Source of the DNA: Rebecca billardiae RCC1528
Lineage: Eukaryota > Protista > Haptophyta
NCBI GenBank assembly: GCA_965240325.2
Contig: OZ251227.1
Span: 1,612,001 to 1,676,000 of the forward strand
DNA length: 64,000 nucleotides
Direction: 5' to 3'
Under the pieces are notes generated by a model. That model was not told where the DNA came from and searched no databases. It was given only the letters and a program-made list of their open reading frames with translations. A program made the position numbers and the translations under genes. Position 1 is the stretch's first letter, and each line of letters starts with the position of its first letter. Of the stretch, positions 17,440 to 46,993 are shown piece by piece.

Positions 17440-17471
<32 letters not shown>

Positions 17472-17478
17472 CGGGCGC

Positions 17479-17518
<40 letters not shown>

Positions 17519-25175: not shown

Positions 25176-25493
25176 GATTGGGAGCCGCGGGATGCGGCCC
25201 CCGGACCCACGGCCGCGGTGCGCCGGAGCCCGGAATCCCCGCGAGGCCGCCGAGGCGCCAATATTTCGCGCCATTTTTCTCGCGGCACGTCGTCAACTCT
25301 CGGATGTGACTCCCTTGCTCGGATCGTCACTGTGGACTGTGGAGTTCAGAGTGTCCGAGCGACGCTCTCGCTCGCGACGACGGTTTGCACTTTCAACTTT
25401 GCCGCGCTGCGAGCCTTTGGCCGGGCCGGGGGGGCGCGAGCGCGCGGCGCGCAGCAAGAGTGCTCGCGGACGCGGGGTCTACCGGGTGTAGCT

Positions 25494-26524
25494 ATGGTGG
25501 CGACGAAGCGCTCGCGGTCCGCGCGCGAAGCGCCCGAGCCCAGGGGCCGAGGCCATGCGGCGAAGGGCAAGGCGGCCGTGACCAAGGCGGGTGGAAAGAA
25601 GAAGGCCGCGGCCGAGCCCGCCGGCCTCTCCGCTGCGCAGCTCGAGAAGATCCAGAAGGTGATGGACGCGCATGCGCTGCTGCGCGGGGTCGGGAAGGCC
25701 ATCGAGCAGCAGATCGAGCGGCACCCGATGCAGCGCGCGCCGGACGGGGGGGAGACCACGTTCAAGCCCATCGAGATCGAGATGCCCGAGGACCTCTACG
25801 AGCACTCGCGGATCGGCCGCGGCAAGTACGCAAGCGCGTGGCACAGGACGAAGGACAGGCGCGGCGAGGTCGTCCTCAAGCGCGAGCGGCTGCAGCGCGC
25901 GAAGGCGCTGCACAAGCAGGCCTTGCTCGACGAGGGTGCGCGCTCGAGCGCCGAGCGCATCAGCCTCCCGCCCTCTCCCCCCCCGCCCCGGCGCCCGTCC
26001 CGTCCACTGCCCCGTGCCACGCGCGCGCTGCGTGTTGGCCCTGTGCTGAACGCCTCGGCCGCGGCCGTCGACCCCGCGCCATGCGGCGTGCAGATGACGA
26101 CGAGGACGCGCAGCGCTGGTCGCAGCTCTCCAAGAAGCGGCAGGCCAAGTACCTCGAGATGGCCGGCGGCGCGGACGACGCGCACGACGACGAGGGCGCG
26201 GGCGAGGAGGGCGGCCATGCTGAGGATGCGGACGCGGAGGAGGAGGAGGGGGCGCCCTCTTCCACGCTCAAGGCCGAGAGCTGCTCGCTCGTGATGCACC
26301 CGGCGGTGGCGCACGAGACGCTCGCGCTGCCCAAGGAGGGCCCCTGCGTGATGCGCTGCTTCACGCTGCACGGCAAGCAGGAGGTGCACGCGCCGATCAT
26401 CAAGCTGCAGACGCGGTACAACTACGCGCGCCAGACGCTCACAGTCAAGGGCAAGGTGCAGTACAAGAAGTGGGAGGCGCGCGCAGAGGAGGCGGAGGAG
26501 GAGGAGGAGGCCAGCGCGCAGTGA
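25494..26524 (+). CDS. Hypothetical basic/acidic protein; intron 25936-26093
   Basis: MVATKRSRS... exon joined in frame by a GT..CAG intron to DDDEDAQRWSQLSKK...; coding-like codon usage. Confidence 0.7.
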
Positions 26525-26925
26525 GCGCCGTGGTATTGCCCGCGCGCGAGCTTGTGTCGCGCCCCCTCGCGCCCGGCGACGACTCGCAGCCATCGCAAGT
26601 GTGCTCGGCGCGGCGCGCCCTGAGCTGCACGACGCCGATAGCAACAGCGTCGACCAGTTTCGTCCAAGGCTCGTTCAATCGCTCTAAACGCTACTGTACG
26701 TGGTGTGTCCCGGCGATTCCCGCGCACGCGGAACCCGCTGGCAGCTTTGATAACTTTGACAGCTTGATGCCCTGGAGAGTGGAGGACGCCAATGCTTCGG
26801 GATGCCGGTGTTGCAAGTGACCTCGATCCCCTCGGGTCTCCACCGCCGACCACCGCGCGGGGTTAAAGGCCTAACGGGGACTGTGTCTGACACTGTGTGC
26901 GGTCGACTGCGTGCGGATATATCTC

Positions 26926-26954
26926 GAGGGTGCACCAGCCGCGGGCCCCTAACT
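26926..26954 (+). mobile_element. Truncated 3' subterminal motif of the E1-E5 family
   Basis: GAGGGTGCACC..CCGCGGGCCCCTAACTA resembles 56892-56916 but the terminal hairpin is missing. Confidence 0.5.
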
Positions 26955-27245
26955 AAGAGTCTAGCTGCGACGTTGATTTACGATGACGAAAAAGCCGACC
27001 ACGCCGGAACTTCGGCGGTCAGCGGCAAAATAAAATTTGTCGTCAGCAAATAATTCAGACGTGAGGATATATCCCCTATAACTACTAGCTAATACGACAA
27101 TAATCGGCTTAAAGTTAACTCACTACTCAGTTAACTGATAATAACTCGATTCCCGTCGAACGATTGAGCACCTTAGCAGGGCGCCCTTGGCGTCCTACAC
27201 TTAGCAGGGCGCCCTTGGCGTCCTACCACCGTGCAGCCTCACCAT

Positions 27246-27950
27246 TCACAGGCGCGTCACAATGGTGCGGTTCATGAGGAATACTGTCACAGCGCCCGTG
27301 CACGTCATGAGGTGCAGGATCTCCTGCGAGCCGAACGTCTTTGGCCACGGGTCTGGCCAGTGCGATGCGTACGCGACACCACCAAGCAGATACTGCAGCA
27401 GGGAGCCCATGTGCAGCCGCCACTCGGTGGTGGTGCAGCGCGCGTACATCATCGGCGCGGCGGAGAGGACGCATGCCACCATACCGATGGCCACCGCTGT
27501 CTCCGACCACCGGCCGCCGCGCTTGACGAATGAGTGTCGCGCGCCGACACCGAGGCAGCCCACAATGCCTGTGCCGACGATGATTGCCTTCTGCTGCGGA
27601 AGGAGAAGGGTCATCGGGCAGTACGCGCCGGCCACCATCATTAGAATGCCCACATGGTCGAGGTCCGAGATGAACTGCTCCGCAGCGAGGCTCCAGCGCC
27701 GCCGGTGGAACTGCGAGCTCACGCCGAACTGCACCGCCCAGCCGAGGATGAAGCCGAGAGCGCCCCACGTTGCGCGCGGCGTCGTGCAGCGCGAGAGGAG
27801 GTCCGCGGCGAAGAAGGGCGTAAGCGCAAAGAATATTTCGTGGCTGACGCCGCGTAGAGAGGGCTTCGGCTTGGAGCCGTCGCAGTAGAAGTACGTGTAC
27901 CGGTCGCTCCGCTGCGGCCCGTAGCCCAATCTCGTGAGCAAGGCCGCCAT
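27246..27950 (-). CDS. Hemolysin III / PAQR family membrane protein
   Basis: KPSLRGVSH, SSQFHR, DHVGILMMVAGAYCP and WPDPWPKTFGSQEILH motifs; about 7 TM segments. Confidence 0.9.
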   Translation of the reverse strand: MAALLTRLGYGPQRSDRYTYFYCDGSKPKPSLRGVSHEIFFALTPFFAADLLSRCTTPRATWGALGFILGWAVQFGVSSQFHRRRWSLAAEQFISDLDHVGILMMVAGAYCPMTLLLPQQKAIIVGTGIVGCLGVGARHSFVKRGGRWSETAVAIGMVACVLSAAPMMYARCTTTEWRLHMGSLLQYLLGGVAYASHWPDPWPKTFGSQEILHLMTCTGAVTVFLMNRTIVTRL

Positions 27951-28447
27951 TGCTGAATCAAGAAAAGGAAGCGCCCGGATCGCTTGCTCGCCAGCCGCCT
28001 TGCCACGGTGCATCTGACAGCACTTCAGCAATGCACGTGACGGAATTGATGAGAATCGTGGTTATTGGAATCACATGATTGGTGCATGCTTATTTATTGC
28101 TTTCTGTGAAGGACTGTCACGACAACGCGCTGCAGAGTGCAGTCACGCGTTCGTACAGTCGCTTCAGATCATCACAGCGAGACTGCCTCACGGTGCATGT
28201 GTGCTGTGCTGTCTGTCTGCGACCTGTTCAACTGGCACGGGTCGAGATCGGTGACACAGGCCGTCGCCGCGTGTCAGTCGTCAAGTGGTCAACCCAGTCA
28301 CGCATCGCCATCGGCACGGCGCGTCGTGCGGACCGGAGCCACGAGTCCCTGCAAGCCCGATCACCACTGTGAGGCTGCACCGCGGCTGACGTGCGCGTGC
28401 GAAGCCATGCGTCACACAGGTGCAAATGGCGTGCCCAACACATGGAC

Positions 28448-29257
28448 TCATGGCGTCAGCATGCGAAGCAAGTCCGAGCGAAGCGTCGCGTCCGACTGGA
28501 AGACGCCGTGCAGCGCGCGCGTCGTCGTGCGCGCACCCGGCTGCTGCACACCGCGCATGGACATGCACATGTGTGCGCACTCGACGATCACGGCGACGCC
28601 CTTGGGCGCGAGGTGCTCCATGAGCGCGGTGGCGACCTGCACCGGCCGTCCAACGAGGGGATGCGGTGTGAGGGGGCGGATGGCCTGCGCCGTGTACGCG
28701 CGCGCGCGCACACGCACCTGCTCTGTCAACCTCTCCTGCACCTGCAGCCTGCGTGCGTACATACCCACCAGCCGGCCGAGCTTGGACAGGCCGATCACCT
28801 TCCCGTCGGGCACGTAAGCGACGTGCGCCTTACCGTAGAACGGGAGCATGTGATGCTCGCACAGCGAGTGCACGCCGATGTCGCGCACAATGACCATGTC
28901 GCCGCACCGATCCTCGTTAAAGATGGCATCGCCGATCACGTCGGCGGGGGACAAGAGGTAGCCGGCCGTGCAGTCGAGGAGGGCCTTCGACATGCGCGCC
29001 GGGGTGTCGACGAGGCCCTCGCGCTCCGGGTCCTCGCCGAGGCACTCAAGCAGCGTGCGCACCGCCGCCTCCATCCGCTCGCGCTTCCGCTTTTTCGCGA
29101 TGCCGGCTGAGCCAGCGTTGGCGTCCTGGTCGTCGCGGCTGTGCACTGCATTGACAACCTCGTCAGACGCGTACAGTACGTCGACAGGCCGCTTTGCGCT
29201 CGGGCTAGGCGAGTCCGCCCGCTTGCCCTCGGCCTCCAGCGTGTCCTCGGCGATCAT
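28448..29257 (-). CDS. GCH1: GTP cyclohydrolase I; in-frame intron 28637-28717
   Basis: [40 protein letters not shown] and HMCMSMRGV; zinc ligands intact. Confidence 0.97.
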
Positions 29258-29549
29258 CTCCGCCGTTGAATGGGTGTGGGGACGTGGCCGTGCGACGCCC
29301 TCAGTTGGCCGGGGCAGCTGACGAACGCAGCTCGCGCGCCTCAAATAATTCGATCGATGAATACGGGGCGGGATCCGGCTCTATCTGCTGAAGATCCCGG
29401 TCCGGTCCGGGGGGCGGGGGAAGCATTTGCGCTCGCCAGGGAGCCACCCTGGCGAGCGCCGCCCAGTGAGCCTCGCCGTCGCCGTCGGGCAAGTGTCGTG
29501 GCTCCGGCGGAAGGAGGTTAGACGGCGAGCCCCGCGCGCTGCAGTGGCT

Positions 29550-30839
29550 ATGACTGGTCAGCGAGCCGTGACCGTCGTGGCGGTGCTGGTCCTGTCGGTC
29601 GCACGGGCGCACCCGGACTACATCGACACGTCCCTCTGCGGCGAGGCGGCGCACCCGGACGGGCCCCACAAGGGACACGGCGCCCCGGTGCTTGACAGAG
29701 ACCTCAGCCTCCGCTTCTTCTGGGCAACACCAGACAATTCTGTGGCCCTTGACGATGCCACCGAGTACCCCGCCTACGACGAGTGGGTGGCACAGAACGG
29801 TCACCTCGAGCTGCCGCCGGGCGCGTTTGCCCCTGGCGAGCGCCTGGTGGCCCTCCTCGCCTGCGGGGGCGGGCGCACGTGCCAGGTGCTCATGACAGCC
29901 ACGGCGGGTGCGTTTGAAGACCGCGGGATCAATAACGACGGGGACGCGCAGCAAGACGCGGCAGTTCGCTGCAGCGGGCGCCGTGTGGACGTCCGCGGAG
30001 CCAATTTGGCCTACCACCCCCTCGTGTGGACTGCCCCGGCAGCCGGGTCGGGCCCCGTGGCATTCGGCGTGACCGCCGCCGCGTCCCAGTCCTCCTCCTA
30101 TCTCCGCCTCACGCCTTCCCACGTCGTTGCCGCAAACGCGTCTCTGGCGCGGCCCGGGGGGGCACCTGCAGGTCCGCCCGCACCCCGGGAGAAGCGGATG
30201 GCCCTCGTGCTCGTGCTCCACGGCTGGTTTGCGGCGCTTGCCTTCGCCGTCGCCTTTCCCCTCGCGGCCGCCCTTGCGTGGGCCACGCGCCCACTCCGGA
30301 GAGGGCGGTCAGCCACGGCTGCGCAGCCAGAGCCTTCCCACGCTCCTGTTGGCGCACTCGCGGGGTTGGCCTCCAAGCGCGTGTCGGCACACAAGCGACT
30401 CGCCTACACTGGGGCAGTGCTCGCAGCCGTGGCCTTCGTCCTCGTCTTCGCCTACAACAGCGCCCCGGGCTTGGACCACTTCTGGGACTCCCACAGCCAT
30501 TGGGGCATCGCTGCCCTCATCCTTGCAGCGAATCAAGTGCAGGGGGGGCTCCTGCGCCCACCAAATGCGGGCGCGGGCGAGAGGCCTTCGAGCGAGCGCC
30601 TGCGGTGGCGCGCCGTCCACGGCATTGCGGGGCTCCTCACCCTCACTGCCGGTGTCGTGGCCACGTGGAAGGGTCTGAATGACGCGGCTCACGAGGGCGC
30701 CGTTGCGGGCGCGCTGCTCGCGCGGATCGTGACGACGGTGTGGCTGTGTATTCTCATCATGGCTGTTCTTGCAGGGGAGGTGCGCCGGCGATTCGCTACC
30801 GAGGCTGTGCTTGAGACGGGGGCTGCCGCCGAGAAATGA
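29550..30839 (+). CDS. Signal peptide + Reeler-like domain + cytochrome b561 domain (ferric-chelate-reductase-like)
   Basis: Four heme-ligand-type His in TM helices (LHGW, AHKRL, HSHWG, VHGIAG), QVQGGLLRP and RLRWRAVH; WTAPAAGSGPVAF is Reeler-like. Confidence 0.8.
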   Translation: MTGQRAVTVVAVLVLSVARAHPDYIDTSLCGEAAHPDGPHKGHGAPVLDRDLSLRFFWATPDNSVALDDATEYPAYDEWVAQNGHLELPPGAFAPGERLVALLACGGGRTCQVLMTATAGAFEDRGINNDGDAQQDAAVRCSGRRVDVRGANLAYHPLVWTAPAAGSGPVAFGVTAAASQSSSYLRLTPSHVVAANASLARPGGAPAGPPAPREKRMALVLVLHGWFAALAFAVAFPLAAALAWATRPLRRGRSATAAQPEPSHAPVGALAGLASKRVSAHKRLAYTGAVLAAVAFVLVFAYNSAPGLDHFWDSHSHWGIAALILAANQVQGGLLRPPNAGAGERPSSERLRWRAVHGIAGLLTLTAGVVATWKGLNDAAHEGAVAGALLARIVTTVWLCILIMAVLAGEVRRRFATEAVLETGAAAEK

Positions 30840-31334
30840 CGAATGAGGCGCCGCCGCCGCGCCGGCCTAAGGCCAGTAACTATGCAAGGCCAAAGGTGCA
30901 CGCGTCGGCCGCGCGCGCGCGCGCATACGAACGTCGTAGACGTATTATCGGTGTCACTCACAAACGTGTCTCGGATTCGCCCACCTATAAGTCGGCGATT
31001 GCCGATTGCCTTCGGCTGGCAGGCAGTGGCAGATCACAACGGTGCGGATCCGTACGGGCTGAGGGGAGAATCTCACATATTGACGCAATCAGACCGCGTC
31101 GTAATCAAGTCGGCAGCGATATCGTCTCACAGGCTGTTTTCACACCTAAATCCACCGCTACAAAAATCCCTCAAATCCTGCTGCGCGCATCTGATCCATT
31201 TCATCCTCTTTTTTGATTTTGCGGAGCACGTGCGCCGGCCCCCGCCCCCCCCGCCCCCCGGCTTTCGCTCGTAACGCTCAGACCTTTGGCGGGGGGCGGG
31301 GGGGTGCGCCATAACACCGAATACGGTTACTTAG

Positions 31335-32816
31335 CTAGTACTTGCGTCGCACTGCGTCCGCCACGCGTAACACGTCCACCATCTCCTTCACATCGTGAAC
31401 GCGGTGAATGTCCACAGCTGGGACACAACACGCTGTGGCAGCCGCGGTTGCCCATACGCGATCTGCAGCTGTCGGGGCGTGCACGATATCCTCATCGCTC
31501 ACGGGCCACAGGCCTGTCGCGCTGTGCTGGAGCACACCGCCGAGCCAGGCCTTGCGCGACAGCCCCATGAGCACCGGCAGGTCTCCCAGCCCCGCGCGCA
31601 CCACATCCAGGTGCTGCAAGACGGCCAAGTTATCCGCAGGGGACTTGCTGATACCGAGCCCAGGGTCCATGACCACGTCGAAGCGGGGCAGCCCTGCGGC
31701 GAGGGCGAGCTGGGTCTGCGCTCCGAGCTCAGCCACCACAGCTTCTGCCACGCCCCCAGGCCAGCGCGAGAAGTCCCCCTGCCCTGAGCCCAACCCTTTG
31801 CGCACCCATGCAGCTTTGGACATGCGTGCGCTGTACTTGCGTGTGCTCTCCTCCATGCAGTGCATGAGGATGAAGGGCACTCCCAGGCGGGTGGCCAATG
31901 GCGCCATGCGCTCGTCGACAGTGCCACCAGATATGTCGTTCACAATGTCTGCACCGGCGGCAACAGCCTCCTCGGCCACCGCGGCGCTGAATGTGTCCAC
32001 GGAGATGGGTACCGAGAGCCCACTCGCTCGCAAGGCACGCACGGCTGGCACGACGCGCGCCATCTCGCGCGCCTCCGCAGCACCAGTCACGCCCGTCGCA
32101 TAGCCTCCAATGTCGATCACGTCGGCCCCTGCCGCCACCATCGCGAGGGCGTGGCGGCTAGCAGCCTCTAGCGCGGCCGCGCTGGGCTCATCCTTCACGT
32201 GTGGCGTATCCGAGTCGGGGGACATGTTCAGGATTCCCATCACGTAACTGCGCGCGCCCCAGGTCCACACCTGCGCGGGCGAGCCCGACAAAGGGCAGGC
32301 CGCGCGCGCGCCAAAGGCACGGGGTAGGGCGGGTACCACCCGCTCGCCTGCGAGCTCAGAAACCGTGCGGCTGGTCGGCGGGAGCCGCAAATCACCCGCC
32401 ACCTCGGCAAGCGCCTGCAGCAGCGCCTGGTGCCTCTCGCCGCCCCGCGGCGCAGGCGCGTCGAGCGCGAGGCCGCCGCCGGCGTAGCTGGCGTCGTCTA
32501 GTGCGACGAGATCGACATCCGTCGCTGTTGTGGAGCTGGGCAGTGCCACCGCCGCTGCTCGAACGCTCGCAGCTACCGCCGTGGCAGCGGCGAGCAGCTC
32601 AACCACGGAGGCACTCGTCTCCACCCCTGCAACTGCGTGAAGCGTCGCGTCAGCCGCGGGAACGCCCCTAGCCTCCGGAGGTGGCGATGGAGAGCATACA
32701 AGCGACGATGTGCGCACGACCCGCCCGACGTTGCCCAGCTCGCGCAGCGCGGCGCGCACGGCTGCGACCCGGTCCCCTGAGCCCGCACGGAGGCCGAACC
32801 ACGCGACGCGCACCAT
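31335..32816 (-). CDS. Divergent HPPK-DHPS (FolK-FolP) fusion
   Basis: YVMGILN, DVIDIGG, ISVDT, IVNDISGG, ILMH, DPGLG, GLSRK and RVHDV; the N-terminal ~160 aa follow the HPPK pattern (GDR..AL..L, SSL, VET...ELL, DVDLV, LAEV). Confidence 0.93.
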   Translation of the reverse strand: MVRVAWFGLRAGSGDRVAAVRAALRELGNVGRVVRTSSLVCSPSPPPEARGVPAADATLHAVAGVETSASVVELLAAATAVAASVRAAAVALPSSTTATDVDLVALDDASYAGGGLALDAPAPRGGERHQALLQALAEVAGDLRLPPTSRTVSELAGERVVPALPRAFGARAACPLSGSPAQVWTWGARSYVMGILNMSPDSDTPHVKDEPSAAALEAASRHALAMVAAGADVIDIGGYATGVTGAAEAREMARVVPAVRALRASGLSVPISVDTFSAAVAEEAVAAGADIVNDISGGTVDERMAPLATRLGVPFILMHCMEESTRKYSARMSKAAWVRKGLGSGQGDFSRWPGGVAEAVVAELGAQTQLALAAGLPRFDVVMDPGLGISKSPADNLAVLQHLDVVRAGLGDLPVLMGLSRKAWLGGVLQHSATGLWPVSDEDIVHAPTAADRVWATAAATACCVPAVDIHRVHDVKEMVDVLRVADAVRRKY

Positions 32817-32891
32817 GCTGCACGTAACCTGGAGGTCCGGGCCGGTTGCTGGAGCTCCTGACCTCCCCTGTCCTGACCAATCGTACCATAA

Positions 32892-33504
32892 TGTATGGAG
32901 CGCTCGTTGGAACTTGAGCGGGGGTGGAACTTGACATCGCATTTCCCAGCGAAGTGCCCCATCTCGGCGGGGCTGGCACGGTCGGCACACGCTCCTGAGC
33001 GCTCGCTTTGCGGTGCGGCAGGCCTTGGACAGCCCAGACAGACATGCCGCGACCGAATTACCGGGCCATGCGCGCACCACACCCGCGCTACATGGCCTAC
33101 GCGCTGGACGACTGAGAGGCAACGCCGAACCACTGCATTCCACTGCCCCGCATGCACCCCGAGTCACCTTCAGAGCGCGTCGACGAGCGCAGAGCGGGTG
33201 CGTGGGAGTTCGACCAACTCGTGTACCTTCTTGCAAGCACCAGCGGCGAGGTCGCAAGCCGAACCTTGACCAGCCGTGGAACTTGAGCTGGTCGGCAGCA
33301 AAACCACCGTTCAACCCGGATCAAGTTAGCAGCGTGCGAGGAGGAGGCGCGGTGCGCGTCCGCGGCTGGCGAGAGGCGTCCGGACCGTGCCGTTCTCGGC
33401 CGCGCCCGCGCGCTTCCCGCCGCCGCGGGCCCCGTGTACGCCCGTCGTCGCCCTCGCCGCGCGGGCGCCAAACCGGCGTCAAGTTCCAACGAGCGCTCCA
33501 TACA
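32892..33504. mobile_element. MITE-like element with 26-bp perfect inverted repeat
   Basis: TGTATGGAGCGCTCGTTGGAACTTGA (32892-32917) is the reverse complement of 33479-33504; extra GGAACTTGA motifs lie inside. Confidence 0.75.
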
Positions 33505-33540
33505 CGGTCGAGCACCCCTCGCTGTGCGAGGGGTCCGGCG

Positions 33541-34116
33541 GAAAGGACAGTGGCACCCTGGTCAATCTGGCCCCGCGCCCCTCTCGCGGGCTCTGGCGCG
33601 CGAACGCTTTGTCACTAGTGGCTGCCGAGCCGTAGATTGGCGCTCCGTGCACCAACAAAGACATCCCCAGCCGCATGTTGCCACTCGACACCTCGTCTCG
33701 CCTCGCGCGGAGCCAACTTGTGGTGTGCGGGAGCTACCCGAAGCACAGGCTGTGCTGCGCGCGGCGCGTCGCGAGTCGGGAGTGCATCGGAGCACACGGC
33801 GGTGCATGACGTGCCATGAGGCAGACATGAGTATGTATTCAACGGATTGCGCGTGCGACGCCGTCGCGATGCACTGTTGACCCGCCACGCGTGTCGCTAC
33901 ACGGCCCAGTGTGCTTCGAGTGGCTCCCGCACACCACAAGTTGGCTCCGCGCGAGGCAAGACGAGGTGTCGAGTGGCAACATGCGGCTGGGGATGTCTTT
34001 GTTGGTGCACGGAGCGCCAATCTACGGCTCGGCGGCCACTAGTGGATACGCGTTCGCGCGCCAGAGCCCGCGAGAGGGGCGCGGGGCCAGATTGACCTGG
34101 GTGCCACTGTCCTTTC
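33541..34116. mobile_element. Foldback element with ~205-bp inverted arms
   Basis: 33541-33747 matches the reverse complement of ~33910-34116 with scattered mismatches. Confidence 0.85.
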
Positions 34117-35230
34117 TGTTGGCGGTGTCGCAGAGCGACCCGCCGGCCGTTACAGGGCCATTAGAAGGCAGTGTACTAATTCTATGATTTAATTAAAGAC
34201 ACAGTCACGAGGGCGCAGCTCTCCTGATTCGTCTGTAGTGGTACTCCACCCGTCCCAGAAACCCCGTGAGCCCGTCTTCGGCTCAGCGGGCTCATGACAT
34301 TCCATGGAATGTCATGAGCGCCCGGACTATTATTAAAACTGACCGCCACGCACTAGTTGCGGGTATTTTTCAATACCACGGACTCGACTCGAGCCTTGAC
34401 GTATGGGGCTGGGACGGGTGGGTCGAAGCTTGCAGCAGTGGCAGTGGTGTGAGCATTCTATTCCTTTGGTGTGAGCACGTTGACGTTCAGGTCGCCATCA
34501 TGGTGGACGTCGTTGTTATCGTCGTCGACGTCGTCAGGCCCACCGGGGAGATGTATGGGTACTTTATCCATACCGTACTCGGTACGTATGGCGGGCCGTA
34601 GGTCCGCCCCTTGTAGTGCCCGGGAAAAAGATAAGAAAAAGATAAGAAAAAGAAAATCGCCTCGCCAAGAAAAGAATATCGCCTCGCTCACTACCGGGCG
34701 CCCTCGCAGCTCCCACTGGGGACGCTCGGCCGAAAACCATCTGGCGCCTGGCGCGGAGCGCGTGGGCGGCGCGCGCCGAATCCAACGCCGGCGCGGACAT
34801 CGTGAGAGGACTCCCGAACGGTGCTTTCGCCCGATTCGCGATTGCTGCCCTCGTCGTCTCGCGTGCAGGTCGAACGAGGGCCAAAGTCGACGCGTTTGGA
34901 GGTACGCTCGGCGCGTCGACACGATCGTGCGACCTGGGGCGGTCCTCGCCCGACTTGCACGTCGAGCGCTCGCACGAGCCATAGCATCAAGCGCTGCGCA
35001 CGATGGCCGCCTCGCTCGATTCACCGTCGCGCGTCGGGCTCGGTGCGGAAAGGCCCTCATCACGAGGTGTCTCGCGGGCGGGAAGCGCCATCCCACGCGA
35101 CGCAAGATTTGGCGCGGCCTTCTGAACACCATAACCGGAATCCACACACCGGACTATCCAGGTGCCCCGGTTGGCAAGGTCGGGCGCATGCAAATCCGTT
35201 TGCTACGGTCGGTGGCGTTGTCCGGCCTGC

Positions 35231-35812: not shown

Positions 35813-36232
35813 AAACGCTAAAAGGCGCGAACCCGCTGGGGAAATATTGCGACAGCACTGGCACGGCCCGCCGACCCCCCCCGCCCGCCAGGGCACAGTT
35901 TTCACTTGTTTAGGAAATCGTCAAATAATAGGAAGTTCTTGACCAGCCTATGGTAGCGCGTACGCGACCGCCCGGGGAGCACGGGGCAGGCTCGACCAGC
36001 TGCTACCCGCGGCTGAGACTGCCAGCTGACATCCGGACCTGCACTTTCGCCCTTGCTCGGGGCACAGCAGGTCCATGCGAGCCGCGCAGCGCAGGTGGAT
36101 CGCGCTTCAGCAGCTCAAGGCCGCGCTCAAGCTTTACGATCGCGGTGCAGGCTATGCTCTGCCACCAACGCCGACTTCGTGTCGACGATCGGGCACTGCC
36201 GCCGACGAATCAGGAGACCCGCGTCGTCCTAC

Positions 36233-36501
36233 CAAGGGGCTTACAAAATACCACTGGGGGCGAAAGCGCCAGTGCGGAGCCCCGTCGCGACCCCGGCTCC
36301 TCAAACGGAAAGTGTCCGGTAGCTCTTATGGAAAAAAGACCGGAATGCCTTGAAAGAATACGAGATGTGTCGACAGATTACCCGCTTTCCCGGATTCAAA
36401 CTTCTCGCACAGTGTTTTCCACTCACCGGACACAATCCGTTTGAGGAGCCGGGGTGGCGACGACTGTGTTTCGCCCCCAGTGGTATTTTGTAAGCCCCTT
36501 G
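36233..36501. mobile_element. 269-bp MITE, P-element-like termini
   Basis: CAAGGGGCTTACAAAATACCACTGGGGGCGAAA TIR; 7-bp duplication GTCCTAC at 36226-36232 and 36502-36508. Confidence 0.9.
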
Positions 36502-36583
36502 GTCCTACCTGTGTCGTTAAATCATAGAATGGGTATGGGGGTAGTGATAGATCCCCGGGCGGGCCGCACCTGTCTTGGCCACG

Positions 36584-37198
36584 ATGGCGTCGCCCAAATT
36601 CGACGTCGTCTTGGCGTGCTGCCGCAAAACTCTCATGATCGGAAGATGCGGGAAGCTGCCATGGCCGCGCCTGCAACTTGATTACCACTTCTACCATCAG
36701 CTTGTGAGCTCCACGCGCGACCCGCTCAAGCGTAACGCCATGATCATGGGTACGCGCACATTCAGCAACATGCAGAAATACAGCCCCTGGGCGTTCGACC
36801 TGGGCCTCCTAGCCCTCCCTGTGGTCCTCACCCGCCGTCCGGAAGCGGATGCCCGGGCGCTCTTCAAGATACCCAAGGACGTGCTTGTTGCTGAATCTCT
36901 CGAACACGCGATGCAGCTCGTGGCAACGGACGAGGTTGTCGGTGACGTGGCCGTCGAGAAGGCATATGTTCTTGGGGGAGCTGCGCTGTATGCGGAAGCC
37001 CTCGCATCGGACAGGCTCGAGCGCGCGTATGTGACGTGGGTCGATCTGCTACATGAGGAACGCACCCCTGATGACTTGTGCCTTCCTGCTGGTTGCTTTG
37101 ATCAACTCGTGTTGGATCCGCAATGTTCCCGTGCAGGGAAGGTTCACACGAGCTCACATGGGATTGGTTTTGAGTTCAACACGTTTGTCCGAGGATGA
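36584..37198 (+). CDS. DHFR: Divergent monofunctional dihydrofolate reductase
   Basis: IGRCGKLPWPRLQLD, DPLKRNAMIMGTRTF, VLTR, SLEHA, VLGGAALYAEAL, YVT and GIGFEFNTFVR; stop codon with no thymidylate synthase domain following. Confidence 0.92.
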   Translation: MASPKFDVVLACCRKTLMIGRCGKLPWPRLQLDYHFYHQLVSSTRDPLKRNAMIMGTRTFSNMQKYSPWAFDLGLLALPVVLTRRPEADARALFKIPKDVLVAESLEHAMQLVATDEVVGDVAVEKAYVLGGAALYAEALASDRLERAYVTWVDLLHEERTPDDLCLPAGCFDQLVLDPQCSRAGKVHTSSHGIGFEFNTFVRG

Positions 37199-37228: not shown

Positions 37229-37345
37229 CGAGAGAGAGAGAGAGAGCCGAGAGAGAGAGAGCCGAGACGGAGAGAGAGAGCTGAGAGAGAGAGAGAGAGA
37301 GAGCTGAGAGAGTGAGAGACGGAGTCACTAGCGAAAGAGAGCGAG
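37229..37345 (+). repeat. Imperfect (GA)n microsatellite
   Basis: Direct reading. Confidence 0.9.
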
Positions 37346-37454: not shown

Positions 37455-39071
37455 TGACCGCGTTCCGCGGTCCTTTTCCGTAGAACGAACGTAGTTCGGG
37501 GCCCGCGGTGGCGGTGCACCCTCCGTCGCAGTCGTCCCGTACACGTGTAACTAGACTCCATCCAGCGGCGCGCCGCCCCAGCGCCGCGCCGCCGCCGGCG
37601 TGCGCCGAGTGTGGATGTCGGTCGTCGGCCGAGCTGCCCTCATCACAGACGGCCCTTACCTGACCCCCTGCGCGTGCGCGACGGCCGACAGGCGGATGCG
37701 ACTCGGCGTGATCGACGCACGAGCGCGACTCTTGCACGCCAGGCCACCGGCGGAGCTGACTGACAGCCAGGGAGCCGGACGGCGCGGGACCGCGCGGATT
37801 CGACCGTTCGTTCGGGCCTGCCGCTGACCGTCGTCGCCGCGACGCCAGCAGCGCAGGAGTAGATGATCTGCAGGTCAGTAGGGTTCGACCTGCGCGCCTG
37901 CGCGACGGCCGACAGGCGGGCGCGAGGCGTGAGCGACGCATGAGCGCGACTCAACGTGCACACCAGGCACCACGCGGCCGAGCTGACTGACCGCGAGCCA
38001 GGGAGCACGGTGCGAGCAGCCATGCAGCACCGGTGCTTGCGCGCGCCGCGCGTGCACGGGGTGACACACCTCGGTCAGGCTCGGCACGCGTCGCAGAGGC
38101 ACGGCCAGCTCTGGGCACGCCAGGCGCCCAGGCCACGCGGAGCTGACAGCCACGGGGAGCCGACGGCGCGCGGGGCCGCGGCCAGTTCCGAGTTCGACTT
38201 GCGCCTGCTCTGAAGAAGAGTTCTGGGAGACCCTGGCGGAGAGGCATGGCAAGGGGGGCGTGTGGTGAAGTCGGAGACTCCGAGATCGATCAGTCCGGCA
38301 TCATGCGCCGCTGCCCCCGAGCTTGCGAGAGCCCGAACACAGGGCGGCGGCTGCGGCGGCGGCGGCGCGGCCGCGCGCCGGCCGGCCGCGCAGGCATCGA
38401 CAGGGCGCGGCAGGGGCGTGCGGAGTGACTAGTGAGCGGGCACGAACGCGATGTCGACGGCCGTCGGGACCCGCCGCAGACGCGCGCTCCAGGCGCCACT
38501 CGGCACTTGCCACGCGCACCTGCCCATCGAGCGCCCCCTTGCGGACCAACCAAGAGTCGTCGAGGCTCGCTCGCCACCCCAGCAGAAGAAACCTGCACAG
38601 CACGTCGTCCTTGCGACGACGGCAGGTTTTGAGCTCGCCAGCTCGGTAAGTCAGTGACTATGGAATGGGCTGGCAACGAATAGCTGCGCGGGTATTTTCA
38701 ATAAGGCTTGCGGGTTTTAGACTCTAGATACCAACCGCCGCGAAGCCAAGTTCATATTCATCAAGGCGGAGGCAAACTATCACACATGAACGAGAGTCTA
38801 CCCACAAAATCGCGCTCGTCACGAACCGTTACGTTAATGTCACGTCCAGCTGACGTCCAGATCGCACTTTACTTAAGGGAATGAGCTGGACGCGCTTATT
38901 TTCGGCCTAATAGACCTCTCTATGCGATCTCAAAAACTCGAAACTCGGTCTCCGCCAGCCCTAAAAATCGCCCCCCGTCCCTTTTTTCTTGATCAAAGAT
39001 CTTTTTGAAACGTGGTTCGGGCCCGCTGGTGCGGGCTCCACGCTGCGCGCTCCGCCCTGCACCGCGGGCCA
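37455..39071 (-). mobile_element. Asymmetric-end element copy E2
   Basis: TGACCGCGTTCCGCGGTCC at the left; about 250 bp at the right is the reverse complement of the E1 5' end. Confidence 0.85.
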
Positions 39072-42971: not shown

Positions 42972-44420
42972 TCATCGCGAGCCTCCTGACGTGTCCGGCG
43001 CACCCTCATCACTCACTTCACCGTTGGCCGGAGGCCGGGTAGTGCCTGTGGGACCCAAAGCTCTTGCGAGCATTGCGCCAAGTGCCAGCGTGGCAACGCA
43101 TAGCGCGAGGAGGAGGAGGAAGGGTGCGTGGACGTCAAGGGGAAATGGAAGCTCGCTGTGCGCGAAGGCGGCGTAGATGCTACCCATCGCAATGGGAGTG
43201 GCACCTCGGCCGAGACCTGACACGGACGCCACGAGGCCGTTGACCAAGCCCGCGTCTGCTGCGGTGACTAGGCTGTTGGTCATGAGCTGCAGCGCAATGA
43301 AGATGAGGGTGCCTGCTGCGCCGCGCACGGCTGCGATCAGCATCAGCGCAGGCCAGAGGAGCTGCGCAGGGAGCCTGGGCAGCACTGGCACGAGCGCAAT
43401 GTAGCAGCCGGCGAGCGCCTGGCCCAGCTCGAGGCAGCCCGGCAGGCCCAAGCGGCCGGCTGTCGCGGGAAAGGCGAGTGGTCCGATGACCAGAACAATG
43501 CCGGTCGGTGCGAGGGCCATCCCGAGCTGCGCGGGGTCGAGGCCGAGCCCCCTGCTGCGGCTCGCGAGGAAGATGGGGACGACCTCGGCGACGCCCCCAA
43601 AGTAGAGCTGCACGGCGAGGTGGACGCCGATGGTGATGGGCACTGCCGCGTGGAGCCCCCACACGCGCCGAGACTCGCGCGGTGGAGCGGCCGCGGTCGC
43701 AGCAGCCGGTGCACTGGCAGACTCTCCGGCCGCCTCGTCCGCAAGACGGCGCCACCCCCGAGCAGGGACCGGCTCGTCGAAGAAGGCCAGCGCCACGAGC
43801 CCGACGCCGGGGCCAACAATCGCCGCACCCACGTACACGAGCAGAAATGGGTGGCGGTCGAAGACCGTGCCGCCGAGGAGCTGCGGGAAGGCGTCAGCCG
43901 GGCGGCTCAGCAGCGCGGCCAGCAGCGGTCCCAGCGCGTGCCCTGCGCCGTATGCCACGCCAAGGGCGGAGAAGCCGCGCGCCCGATTGTCCTCGGTGGT
44001 GATCTCGCGCATGGTAGCGTAGCAGATGCCTGCAGTCGCGTGCAGGAGTCCGCAGAGGCTGCGCGCGGCGAGCGCCTGCAAGAGGGTCGTCGCCATGCCA
44101 AAAGCGACAAGGCACGCGGCGGTGGTCGTCAGGCCAAGGGCGAGGACGCGCCTGCGGCCGTACACGTCGCTCATGCGGCCCCAGAAGGCGCCGACCGCGA
44201 AGGTGGAGAGGAAGTAGGCCGACTGGAGGAGACCTGCAGCGTAGCCAACACCCTCCTCAGCCACCCCAAAGGTCTGGACGAGGAAGGGGAGGGTCGGCAG
44301 CGGCGCCGTGAAGGCTAGAACCTCGCCCATGGTCACGAGCACGAGGATAACCACCGAACGCCAGGGCAGGGGTGCGGACTCAGGCGCCGGGGGAGCCTCC
44401 CCGGCGGGAGGGGCCCACAT
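42972..44420 (-). CDS. MFS transporter (ZIF-like/DHA1)
   Basis: GYAAGLL.SAYF, WGRMSDVYGRRRV, ARSLCGLL, REITTEDNRARGFS and FDRHPFLL motifs. Confidence 0.92.
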   Translation of the reverse strand: MWAPPAGEAPPAPESAPLPWRSVVILVLVTMGEVLAFTAPLPTLPFLVQTFGVAEEGVGYAAGLLQSAYFLSTFAVGAFWGRMSDVYGRRRVLALGLTTTAACLVAFGMATTLLQALAARSLCGLLHATAGICYATMREITTEDNRARGFSALGVAYGAGHALGPLLAALLSRPADAFPQLLGGTVFDRHPFLLVYVGAAIVGPGVGLVALAFFDEPVPARGWRRLADEAAGESASAPAAATAAAPPRESRRVWGLHAAVPITIGVHLAVQLYFGGVAEVVPIFLASRSRGLGLDPAQLGMALAPTGIVLVIGPLAFPATAGRLGLPGCLELGQALAGCYIALVPVLPRLPAQLLWPALMLIAAVRGAAGTLIFIALQLMTNSLVTAADAGLVNGLVASVSGLGRGATPIAMGSIYAAFAHSELPFPLDVHAPFLLLLALCVATLALGAMLARALGPTGTTRPPANGEVSDEGAPDTSGGSR

Positions 44421-44584
44421 CTCCGCCTCGCTCGCAGCCCGCACGGTTCCTCTCACGGCCAGCAGCCGGGCGCGCGACCGCGCGGCCGGGCTGCCGGCGA
44501 ACAGCACAGTACGGCCCTTGACTCTGGGTTCCTGACGAACGTTCCTGATTCCTGAACCCATCCTGATTTGAGCCGACGGCCAGC

Positions 44585-46993
44585 ATGGCTGCCGCGAGCG
44601 ACGGCGGGCCAACCTGCGATGCTGACGTCGACCGGGTGATCGTGCACATCGACTGCGATGCGTTTTACGCGCAGGTGGAGGAATTGCGTGACCCGTCGTT
44701 GCGCAGCCGGCCGCTCGCAGTCACGCAGAAGTACCTGGTCGTGACGTGCAACTACCCGGCGCGCGAGCGCGGCGTCACCAAGCTGATGGCGACGGCAGCG
44801 GCGCTGAAGATCTGCCCAGAGCTCGCGCTAGTGAACGGGGAGGACCTGACGCCGTACCGCGCGGCCTCGAAGGCTCTCCGTGCTGCCCTCGCCCCCTTCG
44901 GCACCGTGCAGAAGCTCGGGCTGGACGAGTGCGTCGTCGATGTGACTACGCGCGCAAAACAGGCGGCGTCCACCGGGGCCGCGGCCGCTTGGTGCGGCCA
45001 CGTGCACGATGTGGCGCTGGGCACGAGCACGGCCGAAGCGCAGGCCGGTCGCACGCAGGTGTACCGCCCCATGGACTTGCGCGCGTGTGCCGCGCGTGCC
45101 CCAGCCGCGTCGCCGAGCGAGCGGCCTCACGACGATGACTCGGCTGGCATGGAGGCGGCGACGCTGTTGTTGATGCACGGCACTGCCATCGCCGCAGAGG
45201 CACGCGCGGCCGTGCGCGCCGCCACAGGGCTGCGCTGCTCCGCCGGCATCGCACACAACCCTCTGCTCGCCAAGCTCGTTTCCGGCCTGCACAAGCCGGA
45301 CGACCAGACGGCGCTGCGCGCGCGGGACGGGTGTGCGTTTGTCGCCCCGCTGCCCATCCGAGCGCTGCCGGGCGTGGGCGCGACGGTGGAGCGGGCGCTG
45401 CAGGGCGTGCTGGGCGTGCGCACGGCGGGCGAGCTGCGTGCGCACTCGCTCGCGGACGTCTCTCGGGCGCTTGCCGAAGGCGGCGCTTCCGCCGCCGCGG
45501 GCGGGCGCTCGACGCTCAGCGCGCGCGCTCTGCTGGGCATGGCGGTCGGCCGCGACCCGACGGCTGTGCGGCTGACCGCCCCGCCGGCGAGCCTGACTGT
45601 GGAGGACTCGTTCCGCCCGTGCGAGAGCCACGCGGAGCTCGCACTCACCGTGCGGCGCCTCGCGCCGGACCTCCTCGCGCGGCTCGCCGAGGAGCAGGCG
45701 GAGACGGGCCGTCGCGCGCGCACCCTCGTCGTGAAGTGGCGCGCGCGCGGAGGGCGCGCGGGCAGGCGCGTGAGCCGCTCAGCGCCCATGCCAACTCTCG
45801 TGTACTCTCGAGCGCGGCGCCGGCCGTCCGGCGCTGCGCCCGACGCGGCCTGGCCGCAGCACGCCCCCTCGATCTCGCCCGCGCTCGTCGCGCTCGAGCG
45901 CGCGGCCTCGGCGATTCTGCGCGAGCAGCTGCGCGAGCCGTTCGCCCTGACACTGCTCTCACTCGGTGCCACGGCGTTTGGCGCTGGGTCAGCCGCCGAG
46001 GGCGCGGCTCCGCGGGCGGCGGGCTTTGTGGCCGCGGCCGCGGCGGGGCCCGGCGCGGTCGCAGTGCGCCATTCGCCCGGCGCTGTGGCGGGGCATGCAG
46101 GTGAAGCCGCACACGCCGGCAGCTCGCCGTGTGGCGCGGAGGGCGCCCGGCCGCCGTCCAAGTCTGAGCTGAGACGCGCGGCCGACGACTCGCGAGCGGT
46201 CAGCGGCGCGGCTGTGGCGGGCGCGAACGCGGCGGGGCGCGTCGAGAGCGGTGGCGGCAGTTTCTGGGCGGAGCTCTCCGCAGCCGAGGCGGAGCAGTGC
46301 GACGAGCTTGGTGCCAGCCCGCACGCACGCCCCGAGCATGCCGCGGGCGCAGCGGCTGGCTGTGATCGGCGGGCGCGACAAGCGCTGCTGCTGTCCCCTC
46401 CGGTGCTCGACGGCAGCGGCCCAAGCGCGTCGCCGCCACCGCTAGCTGGGCCCGTCAACGGCGCGCAGCTGTTACACACAGGCGTGCCTGCGTCTGGCAC
46501 TGCTGGCGCTTGGGCGTGCCCCGTGTGCACCTTCGTGAACTGCAAGCCAGAGGCGCCCGTGTGCGAGGTGTGCGCAAGCGAGAGGTCTCGCGCGCTGTCG
46601 GTGCCATCGGCCGCAGGAGCGCGCGCACCCGAGGCGGCCTGTGACGGCGTGCCGCCATGCGGTGCCGCCGCGGGTAAAGCACAGGGCGACGTCTCTCTTG
46701 CGGTGGAGCCCGCGGTGGACGATGCGAGAGCCCTAGGTGCGGGTGGACCTGCCTCATCGCACGCCGCCGCCCTCTTTTCCAAGCGGTGGGCGATGCCGAC
46801 GCCACAGGGTCGCAGCGGTCATGCCTCCCGCACTCGCAGTCGTCCGAGCAGGAGTCCGGTCCGACATGCTGGCTCGCCCCATCACGACGGCCATGTTGCT
46901 GCCCGCCATGATGAAGACGATCATCACCGGCGTGCAGCTCATGTTGCTGATGGCCCCATGGAGCGCTTCATTGTCCGCCGCCGGCTACTGTAG
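44585..46993 (+). CDS. POLI: Y-family DNA polymerase iota-like with RanBP2-type zinc finger
   Basis: IVHIDCDAFYAQVE, PLAVTQKYLVVTCNYPAR, NGEDLTPYR, LGLDE and LAKLVSGLHKPDDQT; WACPVCTFVN..EAPVCEVC. Confidence 0.9.
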   Translation: MAAASDGGPTCDADVDRVIVHIDCDAFYAQVEELRDPSLRSRPLAVTQKYLVVTCNYPARERGVTKLMATAAALKICPELALVNGEDLTPYRAASKALRAALAPFGTVQKLGLDECVVDVTTRAKQAASTGAAAAWCGHVHDVALGTSTAEAQAGRTQVYRPMDLRACAARAPAASPSERPHDDDSAGMEAATLLLMHGTAIAAEARAAVRAATGLRCSAGIAHNPLLAKLVSGLHKPDDQTALRARDGCAFVAPLPIRALPGVGATVERALQGVLGVRTAGELRAHSLADVSRALAEGGASAAAGGRSTLSARALLGMAVGRDPTAVRLTAPPASLTVEDSFRPCESHAELALTVRRLAPDLLARLAEEQAETGRRARTLVVKWRARGGRAGRRVSRSAPMPTLVYSRARRRPSGAAPDAAWPQHAPSISPALVALERAASAILREQLREPFALTLLSLGATAFGAGSAAEGAAPRAAGFVAAAAAGPGAVAVRHSPGAVAGHAGEAAHAGSSPCGAEGARPPSKSELRRAADDSRAVSGAAVAGANAAGRVESGGGSFWAELSAAEAEQCDELGASPHARPEHAAGAAAGCDRRARQALLLSPPVLDGSGPSASPPPLAGPVNGAQLLHTGVPASGTAGAWACPVCTFVNCKPEAPVCEVCASERSRALSVPSAAGARAPEAACDGVPPCGAAAGKAQGDVSLAVEPAVDDARALGAGGPASSHAAALFSKRWAMPTPQGRSGHASRTRSRPSRSPVRHAGSPHHDGHVAARHDEDDHHRRAAHVADGPMERFIVRRRLL

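What the first reader, a model, noticed from the sequence alone, without database searches (positions are those of the whole stretch)
36584..37198. Stand-alone DHFR lacking the folate-glutamate-binding motif
The sequence resembles the DHFR half of plant/protist DHFR-TS (S..DP.K.NA.IMG) but stops with no TS. The catalytic acidic residue (LPWPRLQLD) and the GG NADPH motif remain. MGRKTWES reads MGTRTFSN, and RPLxxRxN (the Arg binding the glutamate alpha-carboxylate) reads AFDLGLLALP. Inference: a pterin reductase for unconjugated or differently conjugated dihydropterins, or an antifolate-insensitive self-resistance copy. The change matches the DHPS* change.
Basis: partly seen in the sequence, partly recalled or inferred. 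Interest (0 to 1): 0.75.

Follow-up and report, generated by a model that had tools for sequence, protein, structure and literature searches.

The report
Stand-alone DHFR copy without folate-tail site
A GC-rich alga, probably a haptophyte, has an intact extra copy of dihydrofolate reductase that keeps its cofactor and pterin-ring site but has lost the arginine and neighbouring residues that grip the tail of folate, and it sits beside two other pterin-pathway genes, so it may reduce a pterin other than folate; neither its expression nor its activity has been tested.

Summary
Window 36584-37198 (+) is an intact 204-codon ORF with a DHFR fold (Pfam PF00186 E 1e-8; AlphaFold pLDDT 91.9; Foldseek TM 0.76 to Arabidopsis DHFR-TS). 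It stops at the end of the DHFR domain. No thymidylate synthase motif or domain was found anywhere in the 64-kb window.

Its nearest relatives among 1.84 billion representatives are canonical DHFR-TS proteins of a pavlovophyte-like clade (45-55% identity). It is sister to that clade on a long branch.

Against 117 homologues it keeps the catalytic Asp, Trp, both Thr, Tyr, the GG motif and the NADPH-site Thr. It changes almost every residue of the p-aminobenzoyl-glutamate site:
- The Arg found in 97% of homologues (human R70) is replaced, with no basic residue in the segment.
- R65S, L67W, S59N and N72G; P61 deleted; F34Y and T38V.
- A 5-residue insertion is predicted to form an extra helix.

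pN 0.36-0.39 against pS 0.69-0.75, and an open frame expected in 6 of 10,000 shuffles, argue against an old pseudogene.

GCH1 and an HPPK-DHPS paralogue that lacks its pABA loops lie within 9 kb.

Most likely it is an NADPH-dependent dihydropterin reductase for a non-folate pterin, but this is inferred. No orthologue, RNA evidence or assay exists. The scan noted it only on this window, not on other DNA.

The parts
36584..37198 (+). DHFR* gene: single open frame of 204 codons plus TGA stop; a complete DHFR domain with no targeting extension and no TS
   Evidence: last strand FEFNTFVR aligns with the last DHFR strand of DHFR-TS proteins
36680..36682 (+). codon of D33, the catalytic acid (human E30 / E. 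coli D27)
   Evidence: aligned; Asp in 91% and Glu in 8% of 117 homologues
36752..36820 (+). rebuilt segment, residues 57-79 (TRTFSNMQKYSPWAFDLGLLALP): helix C and the loop that normally carries RPLxxRxN; no basic residue in 67-79
   Evidence: pLDDT falls to 77-79 here and an extra helix 68-75 is predicted
36806..36820 (+). 15-nt in-frame insertion (LLALP) absent from all 117 homologues
   Evidence: codon alignment; alignment
36974..36979 (+). codons of G131-G132, the invariant GG of the NADPH site
   Evidence: invariant in 117 of 117 homologues and kept here
37196..37198 (+). TGA stop directly after the DHFR domain, followed by a GA-rich microsatellite
36231..36503 (.). 273-bp fold-back (MITE-like) element 80 bp upstream of the ATG: nested inverted repeats of 35 nt (100%) and 38 nt (92%)
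31335..32816 (-). neighbour: HPPK-DHPS paralogue (DHPS*), head-to-head with DHFR*; conserved DHPS core kept, loop 1, loop 2 (TRP deleted) and the GF(x)K Phe changed
28448..29257 (-). neighbour: GTP cyclohydrolase I
   Evidence: Pfam PF01227 E 8e-67
29550..30839 (+). neighbour: membrane protein with a cytochrome b561 domain
27246..28013 (-). neighbour: HlyIII/PAQR-type membrane protein

Best explanation
DHFR* is a lineage-restricted, stand-alone paralogue of the DHFR domain of the alga's DHFR-TS family, and selection has kept it intact. It retains the machinery for NADPH-dependent hydride transfer to a bound 7,8-dihydropterin ring: the catalytic Asp, the Trp/Thr water network, Tyr, the GG turn and the NADPH-site Thr. 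The channel that normally holds the p-aminobenzoyl-glutamate tail has been rebuilt: the conserved Arg and its surroundings are gone, and a 5-residue insertion is predicted to form a short extra helix. I infer that it works as an NADPH-dependent dihydropterin reductase for a pterin that lacks the folate tail or carries a different one. It probably acts with the adjacent GTP cyclohydrolase I and the adjacent DHPS paralogue, which has lost its pABA loops. Shown: fold, retained and lost residues, phylogenetic origin, absence of TS, signs of purifying selection, and the gene neighbourhood. Inferred: catalysis, substrate, and any pathway link with the neighbours.
For: The fold and family are secure. 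Of 24 columns that are 90% or more conserved in 102 homologues, the query keeps 17, including D33, W27, T59, G131, G132 and T151; Y136, 87% conserved among 117 homologues, is kept as well. It departs at 7. Six of those seven (F37Y, T41V, S62N, L69W, R72D, N74G) lie in or support the tail site. The human residues S59, P61, N64, R70 and Q35 are listed as substrate-site and alpha-carboxylate contacts in PMC7435474. By my own post-hoc grouping, 6 of 7 tail-site columns changed against 1 of 17 others, a hypergeometric p of about 3e-4 worked out by hand. The frame is open over 204 codons, which 12 of 20,000 shuffles achieve. No indel breaks the frame, although nucleotide identity to its closest relatives is only 52-55%, and pN is 0.36-0.39 against pS 0.69-0.75. 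The query is sister to the canonical clade with support 95/80. GCH1 and the DHPS paralogue lie within 9 kb. The DHPS paralogue keeps its highly conserved core residues but changes loop 1, deletes the Arg-Pro of loop 2 and replaces the GF(x)K Phe. There is precedent for a DHFR-fold enzyme retargeted to another pterin: DmrA reduces dihydromethanopterin analogues while true Dfr enzymes do not (PMC6193120).
Against: No RNA run was listed, so expression is unknown. No orthologue with the same changes turned up among 1.84 billion representatives, in the word search or in JGI metagenome contigs, so conservation of the altered site cannot be shown. GC3 is 0.67, falling to 0.50 at the 3' end, against 0.72-0.86 in the neighbours; this could mean weak expression or relaxed constraint. 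The terminal branch is long, 1.57 against 0.11-0.8. R57T removes one NADPH 2'-phosphate contact and G18M changes a 95%-conserved Gly. The pN/pS values are summed over both lineages and pS is saturated. I could not confirm that the same genome also holds a canonical DHFR-TS.
Confidence: 0.45

Rival explanations
1. It is a non-catalytic or regulatory DHFR-like protein. It would bind NADPH and/or a pterin, or modulate the canonical enzyme, as the enzymatically inactive Arabidopsis DHFR-TS isoform inhibits its family members.
For: Substrate-site residues are heavily altered. The adjacent DHPS paralogue also looks like a binder rather than a normal enzyme, with only a weak HPPK match (E 8.5e-4, below the cut-off) and its pABA loops gone. 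Inactive inhibitory DHFR-TS isoforms are described in Brassicaceae (PMC6451014).
Against: All residues needed for hydride transfer and the catalytic acid are kept, which a pure binder would not require. DHFR* has no TS domain, and from general knowledge DHFR-TS proteins dimerise through TS, so an Arabidopsis-type inhibitory mechanism is unlikely.
Confidence: 0.2
2. It is an unexpressed or recently silenced duplicate (a young pseudogene) whose frame is still open, and the rebuilt segment is simply damage.
For: No RNA evidence was obtained. The exact protein is absent from the 15-billion-protein collection, although four neighbouring genes of the same organism are present. GC3 is lower and decays toward the 3' end. 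The branch is long. The gene sits between fold-back elements and microsatellites. No orthologue was found.
Against: About 45-50% amino-acid and 45-48% nucleotide divergence has accumulated without a single stop or frameshift. The departures are concentrated in one functional site and the rest of the core is kept. pN is about half of pS. The model is confident, pLDDT 91.9. Absence from the collection is weak evidence: the contigs there are genomic pieces that break at repeats, and the exact sequences tried for two other window genes were also not found.
Confidence: 0.2
3. It is still a dihydrofolate reductase: a low-affinity or antifolate-insensitive back-up to DHFR-TS that holds the tail through other residues.
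For: The core active site is intact. Three other homologues among 117 also lack the Arg, carrying K, K or C with diverged loops, so an Arg-less DHFR-fold protein is not unique.
Against: The Arg is 97% conserved, and six tail-site positions changed together with an insertion. An acidic or hydrophobic residue replaces the carboxylate-binding Arg. Scores against trimethoprim-resistant Dfr models are far below the cut-offs. I found no antifolate-producing context nearby.
Confidence: 0.15

Closest known systems
DHFR domain of bifunctional DHFR-TS of pavlovophyte-like haptophytes (P0003, P0004, P0005, P0006, P0224, P0225)
   Same: Closest relatives, 45-55% identity, with shared clade signatures such as ACRKT, STRDPL and YAEALAS(D/E)RLERAYVT; same fold and the same catalytic and NADPH residues.
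   Different: All of these keep RPLxxRLN. Those whose sequence extends beyond the DHFR domain (P0003, P0004, P0006, P0224) continue into TS; P0005 and P0225 are fragments. DHFR* has neither the motif nor a TS domain, carries a 5-residue insertion and sits on a branch 2 to 14 times longer.
DmrA, dihydromethanopterin reductase of Methylobacterium extorquens (a DHFR homologue)
   Same: It is a precedent for the DHFR fold being retargeted from dihydrofolate to a pterin with a different side chain. It works in a pathway that, from my own knowledge and not checked here, also uses a DHPS-like condensing enzyme with a non-pABA partner (PMC6193120).
   Different: DmrA is bacterial and not closely related. 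DHFR* arose independently inside a eukaryotic DHFR-TS clade. Its substrate is unknown, and I did not compare DmrA's tail site.
Pteridine reductases PTR1 (trypanosomatids) and FolM (E. coli)
   Same: They have the proposed function: NADPH-dependent reduction of unconjugated dihydropterins alongside a canonical DHFR(-TS). The PTR1 background is in PMC10135059; FolM is from my own knowledge.
   Different: Those enzymes are short-chain dehydrogenases, whereas DHFR* has the DHFR fold.
Enzymatically inactive Arabidopsis DHFR-TS isoform that inhibits its paralogues
   Same: It is a divergent extra copy of DHFR(-TS) with altered function in a photosynthetic eukaryote (PMC6451014).
   Different: The Arabidopsis protein keeps the TS half and, according to that paper, lacks the last protein motif. 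DHFR* is DHFR-only and its changes are confined to the folate-tail site.

Membership tests
Dihydrofolate reductase, PF00186 (EC 1.5.1.3) | DHFR alpha/beta fold and a significant profile match | tested here: met
   Pfam 35.6 bits against a cut-off of 25; pLDDT 91.9; Foldseek E 3e-16 and TM 0.73-0.78 to solved DHFRs
Dihydrofolate reductase, PF00186 (EC 1.5.1.3) | Catalytic acid (Asp/Glu) with its Trp, Thr and Tyr partners | tested here: met
   D33, W27, T151 and Y136 are kept
Dihydrofolate reductase, PF00186 (EC 1.5.1.3) | NADPH site: invariant GG turn, Gly-x-x-Thr, Ala at the strand A end | tested here: met
   G131, G132, G56, T59 and A11 are kept; one contact is lost (R57T)
Dihydrofolate reductase, PF00186 (EC 1.5.1.3) | Conserved Arg (human R70 / E. 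coli R57) that binds the glutamate alpha-carboxylate, within RPLxxRxN | tested here: not met
   Arg in 114 of 117 homologues; here D72 or A77 depending on gap placement, with no basic residue in 67-79, plus R65S, L67W, N72G and a 5-aa insertion
Dihydrofolate reductase, PF00186 (EC 1.5.1.3) | Reduces 7,8-dihydrofolate with NADPH | not testable with these tools
   needs an enzyme assay
Bifunctional DHFR-TS of bikont eukaryotes | Thymidylate synthase domain fused C-terminally | tested here: not met
   TGA directly after the last DHFR strand; no TS motif in six frames of 64 kb; no Pfam domain in the 12 scanned ORFs downstream
Trimethoprim-resistant Dfr families (NCBIfam DfrA models) | Score above the curated cut-off of a resistance model | tested here: not met
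   12-25 bits against cut-offs of 325-360
DmrA-type dihydromethanopterin reductases | Membership of the bacterial DmrA clade | tested here: not met
   The nearest relatives among 1.84 billion representatives are eukaryotic DHFR-TS, and the query nests beside them at 95/80. DmrA sequences themselves were not placed in the tree.
PTR1 / FolM pteridine reductases (SDR superfamily) | Short-chain dehydrogenase Rossmann fold | tested here: not met
   All top structural matches are DHFRs; Pfam finds only PF00186

The most novel reading that the evidence does not exclude
GCH1, the pABA-pocket-less HPPK-DHPS paralogue and the Arg-less DHFR paralogue form a eukaryotic gene cluster for a previously unknown reduced pterin cofactor or metabolite. 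In that compound the pterin would be joined to something other than pABA-glutamate. This would be an independent algal counterpart of the way methanopterin synthesis re-used DHPS-like and DHFR-like enzymes. DHFR* would carry out the final dihydro-to-tetrahydro reduction.
Probability: 0.25. Interest if true: 0.85.

Novelty: new variant of a known kind. Interest (0 to 1): 0.6.

Why it matters
In bikont eukaryotes DHFR is normally fused to TS, and a survey of green-lineage algae found it single-copy there (PMC6451014). The Arg that grips the folate glutamate is close to universal. A selected, TS-less copy in which only the folate-tail site has been rebuilt, lying next to GCH1 and a DHPS copy with the matching loss, gives a concrete candidate for a non-folate pterin reductase on the DHFR fold in a eukaryote. 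It also points to a possible small metabolic gene cluster in an alga. It would be a natural experiment on how DHFR substrate specificity is re-targeted. The proposal can be tested with one recombinant protein and a panel of pterins.

Tried and rejected
- **Intron or frameshift artefact in the altered segment:** rejected. The only GT...AG pair is 20 nt apart and out of frame, and the codon alignment shows in-frame homology followed by a clean 15-nt insertion.
- **Splicing to a TS exon:** no TS motif in the window and no domain in the 12 downstream ORFs scanned.
- **RNA evidence:** The look-up of sequencing runs (kind rna) listed no run, so read laying could not be used.
- **Logan contigs as transcripts:** ERR14847148 and ERR14847151 first looked like transcripts of the neighbours. 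They are collinear genomic pieces covering window 24586-32920, including intergenic DNA, so they say nothing about expression.
- **Orthologue search:** the word search found two canonical fragments. The exhaustive representative search found only canonical DHFR(-TS). The JGI metagenome scan found nothing. The ESM Atlas returned only generic DHFR clusters.
- **Synteny:** the closest HPPK-DHPS genes of relatives sit beside a Na/Ca exchanger and an acidic protein, with no DHFR-like gene next door.
- **Canonical DHFR-TS in the same organism:** the last word search found further clade members from other samples only, so this stays unresolved.
- **Viral origin:** considered because a 189-aa stand-alone relative lies on a 27-31% GC scaffold. 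The tree places DHFR* with the algal clade, not with that protein.

Full report
**1. What is there**

Window 36584-37198 (+) is an uninterrupted frame of 204 codons ending in TGA. It matches Pfam DHFR_1 above the curated cut-off (E 9.6e-9, 35.6 against 25 bits). Among solved structures it matches DHFRs only, led by Arabidopsis DHFR-TS1 (8dae, 5e-12) and chicken DHFR. An AlphaFold2 model built on a 103-sequence alignment is confident: pLDDT 91.9, pTM 0.89. It superposes on plant, fungal, vertebrate and protozoan DHFRs at TM 0.73-0.78. So the fold and family are not in doubt.

The frame is unlikely to be open by chance. Only 12 of 20,000 shuffles of the same bases stay open, and the other five frames hold 3-9 stops. 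Using the lower stop density of the GC-rich flanks, the probability is 1.3e-2.

**2. Stand-alone, no TS**

The last strand (FEFNTFVR) aligns with the last DHFR strand of DHFR-TS proteins, and the stop follows at once.

- A six-frame scan of the whole 64-kb window for five strongly conserved thymidylate synthase motifs found none. The motifs were written from general knowledge of TS.
- The stretch from 37.2 to 42.9 kb is a GA-rich microsatellite, short direct repeats and GC-rich sequence. Twelve of its ORFs of 130 aa or more gave no Pfam hit.
- The next recognisable genes are an MFS transporter (42972-44612, minus strand) and a Y-family polymerase.

Transcript data could not be obtained: no RNA run was listed.

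**3. Where it comes from**

The word-based search found only two relatives, both canonical haptophyte-type fragments. The exhaustive search of 1.84 billion representatives returned 690 homologues.

- The best hits are P0003 (591 aa, DHFR-TS, 55% identity over the matched stretch), P0004, P0005 and P0006. These share clade-specific strings with the query.
- Wherever their sequence extends beyond the DHFR domain, they continue into TS.
- In a maximum-likelihood tree the query is sister to this clade with support 95/80. Its terminal branch is 1.57, against 0.11-0.8 for the clade members.
- Earlier notes of the scan call the genome a pavlovophyte haptophyte. I did not verify the taxonomy myself.

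DHFR* is thus a divergent paralogue of the DHFR domain of that lineage's DHFR-TS, not a foreign gene.

**4. What is kept and what is lost**

I aligned the query with the DHFR domains of its 117 nearest homologues and listed the strongly conserved columns (alignment A1 repeats this with 102 homologues).

Kept:
- A11, I19, G20, P26, W27.
- D33, the catalytic acid.
- N51, M55, G56, T59, P68, A109.
- G131 and G132, which are invariant.
- Y136, A139, T151, D164.

Changed:
- G18M.
- F37Y (human F34) and T41V (T38).
- R57T (K54) and S62N (S59).
- The Pro equivalent to P61 is deleted.
- R67S (R65), L69W (L67) and N74G (N72).
- The Arg present in 114 of 117 homologues (human R70, E. coli R57) aligns with D72. 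If the gap is placed as the predicted strand boundaries suggest, it aligns with A77.
- Five residues (LLALP) are inserted.

No Arg or Lys occurs anywhere in residues 67-79. At the DNA level the segment is homologous in frame up to the GCG codon and then carries a 15-nt insertion, so a compensated frameshift is not needed to explain it. The model predicts an extra short helix (68-75) in place of the usual loop, with lower confidence there (77-79).

PMC7435474 lists Ile7, Glu30, Phe31, Gln35, Ser59, Pro61, Asn64, Arg70 and Val115 as the human substrate site. In that paper Arg70 and Gln35 hold the alpha-carboxylate and Asn64 holds the p-aminobenzoyl carbonyl. In DHFR* the ring-side residues are kept or conservatively replaced: V9, D33, Y34 and L130. 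Every tail-side residue is different: H38, N62, deletion, Y66, D72/A77.

Of 24 columns conserved at 90% or more, 7 differ, and 6 of those 7 are tail-site or tail-supporting positions. By my own post-hoc grouping that gives p of about 3e-4, worked out by hand. The supporting roles of T38 and N72 come from memory, not from a tool.

**5. Is it alive?**

Against the closest coding sequences (L002, L003), nucleotide identity is 52-55%, yet there is no frame-breaking indel or stop. Non-synonymous differences are about half the synonymous ones, which are saturated: pN 0.36-0.39 against pS 0.69-0.75. A copy that had drifted neutrally this far would almost certainly be broken. The gene has therefore been under purifying selection for most of its history.

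Signs of weaker constraint exist:
- GC3 is 0.67, falling to 0.50 near the 3' end, against 0.72-0.86 in the neighbours.
- The branch is long.
- No orthologue carrying the same changes was found anywhere.
- The exact protein is not in the 15-billion-protein collection, although GCH1, the b561 protein, HlyIII and DHPS* of the same organism are.

The last point is weak. The contigs concerned (ERR14847148, ERR14847151) are 100% identical, collinear genomic pieces covering window 24586-32920 that end at repeats. The exact sequences tried for two other genes of the window were not found either.

**6. Context**

Within 9 kb upstream lie four genes:
- an HlyIII/PAQR membrane protein (27246-28013, minus strand);
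- GTP cyclohydrolase I (28448-29257, minus strand; E 8e-67);
- a cytochrome b561 membrane protein (29550-30839, plus strand);
- an HPPK-DHPS paralogue (31335-32816, minus strand), which is head-to-head with DHFR*.

The 3.7 kb between the last two holds fold-back elements: 229-nt arms at 33519-34138 and a 273-bp MITE-like element at 36231-36503.

I made a quick independent check of the DHPS paralogue against 52 homologues. It keeps the invariant core residues: the N, D, N, D, K and R-x-H positions that line the pterin site in E. coli DHPS (that mapping is from memory). It replaces the loop-1 Phe-Ser and Gly, deletes the Arg-Pro of loop 2 (ESTRPG reads YAT--G), and changes the invariant Phe of G-F-x-K. 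Its HPPK match is below the Pfam cut-off.

So two neighbouring, divergently transcribed paralogues from the later part of the folate pathway (DHPS and, two steps on, DHFR) have each kept the pterin side and lost the pABA or pABA-glutamate side, next to the enzyme that starts pterin synthesis. The canonical HPPK-DHPS genes of relatives have different neighbours and no DHFR-like gene beside them.

**7. How it most likely works**

Shown: the fold, the retained catalytic and NADPH residues, the rebuilt tail site, the origin by duplication from DHFR-TS, the absence of TS, the selection signal and the neighbourhood.

Inferred: DHFR* binds NADPH and a 7,8-dihydropterin and transfers hydride to C6 as DHFR does. 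Its substrate would carry no pABA-glutamate, or another substituent that fits a more hydrophobic, non-basic channel.

DmrA is a precedent. It is a DHFR homologue that reduces a dihydromethanopterin analogue, while the true Dfr enzymes of the same bacterium reduce dihydrofolate and show little or no activity on that analogue (PMC6193120). PTR1 and FolM do the analogous job on a different fold.

I put this reading at about 0.45. The rivals are:
- a non-catalytic pterin/NADPH binder or regulator (0.2; compare the inactive inhibitory Arabidopsis DHFR-TS isoform, PMC6451014);
- a recently silenced copy (0.2);
- a residual or antifolate-insensitive dihydrofolate reductase (0.15; resistance-model scores are far below cut-off).

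**8. Membership and novelty**

DHFR* belongs to the DHFR superfamily by fold and descent. It fails one tested defining feature of dihydrofolate reductases proper, the carboxylate-binding Arg, and the defining fusion of bikont DHFR-TS. It should therefore be named DHFR-like, not DHFR.

Arg-less homologues are rare but not unique: 3 of the 117 others, with K, K or C and unrelated loops. I found no paper describing a TS-less, Arg-less DHFR paralogue in haptophytes or other algae. The literature searches were few, and the algal folate survey I read did not mention haptophytes.

I rate it a new variant of a known kind. Interest is 0.6, held down by the lack of expression data, orthologues and biochemistry. 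The scan had noted this gene only on this same window, as part of the cluster note, and not on other DNA.

**9. Limits**

- Whether the same genome holds a canonical DHFR-TS remains unconfirmed.

Noticed in passing
window 36231-36503: A 273-bp fold-back element with nested perfect 35-nt and 92% 38-nt inverted repeats lies 80 bp upstream of the DHFR* start codon. It is MITE-like and occurs only once in this window.
   Followed up: partly
window 33519-34138: A large fold-back with 229-nt arms (92% complementary, 162 nt apart) lies in the spacer between DHPS* and DHFR*.
   Followed up: no
window 37230-37344 and 37670-37952: A GA-rich compound microsatellite starts 30 bp after the DHFR* stop. About 330 bp beyond its end lie two copies of a repeat roughly 60 nt long, spaced about 222 nt apart.
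   Followed up: no
L009:814-1383 (protein P0010): A 189-aa stand-alone DHFR with the canonical Arg lies on a 27-31% GC metagenome scaffold, 105 nt from a UvrD-type helicase gene. It branches beside the pavlovophyte-like DHFR-TS clade and shares ACCRKT and MGRKTF with DHFR*. It may be a giant-virus or other AT-rich genome that captured an algal DHFR.
   Followed up: partly
window 24586-32920 (loci L005-L008): Logan contigs of runs ERR14847148 and ERR14847151 are 100% identical to and collinear with this part of the window, so public reads of the same organism exist. The contigs end at repeats at 24.6 kb and 32.9 kb.
   Followed up: partly
window 16001-20000 and 54001-56000: Blocks of extreme G+C content (81-85%) stand against a background of 61-70%.
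   Followed up: no
window 44585-44612: The longest ORFs of the MFS transporter (minus strand) and the Y-family DNA polymerase (plus strand) overlap head-to-head by 28 bp, so the two genes probably share a very short divergent promoter region or use later start codons.
   Followed up: no
window 22311-26294: A 1327-codon open frame on the plus strand lies just upstream of the cluster. I did not examine it.
   Followed up: no
window 28448-29257: The GTP cyclohydrolase I match to Pfam comes in two stretches (profile 1-120 and a second stretch), suggesting an insertion in the domain. I did not check whether this is the genome's only GCH1.
   Followed up: no
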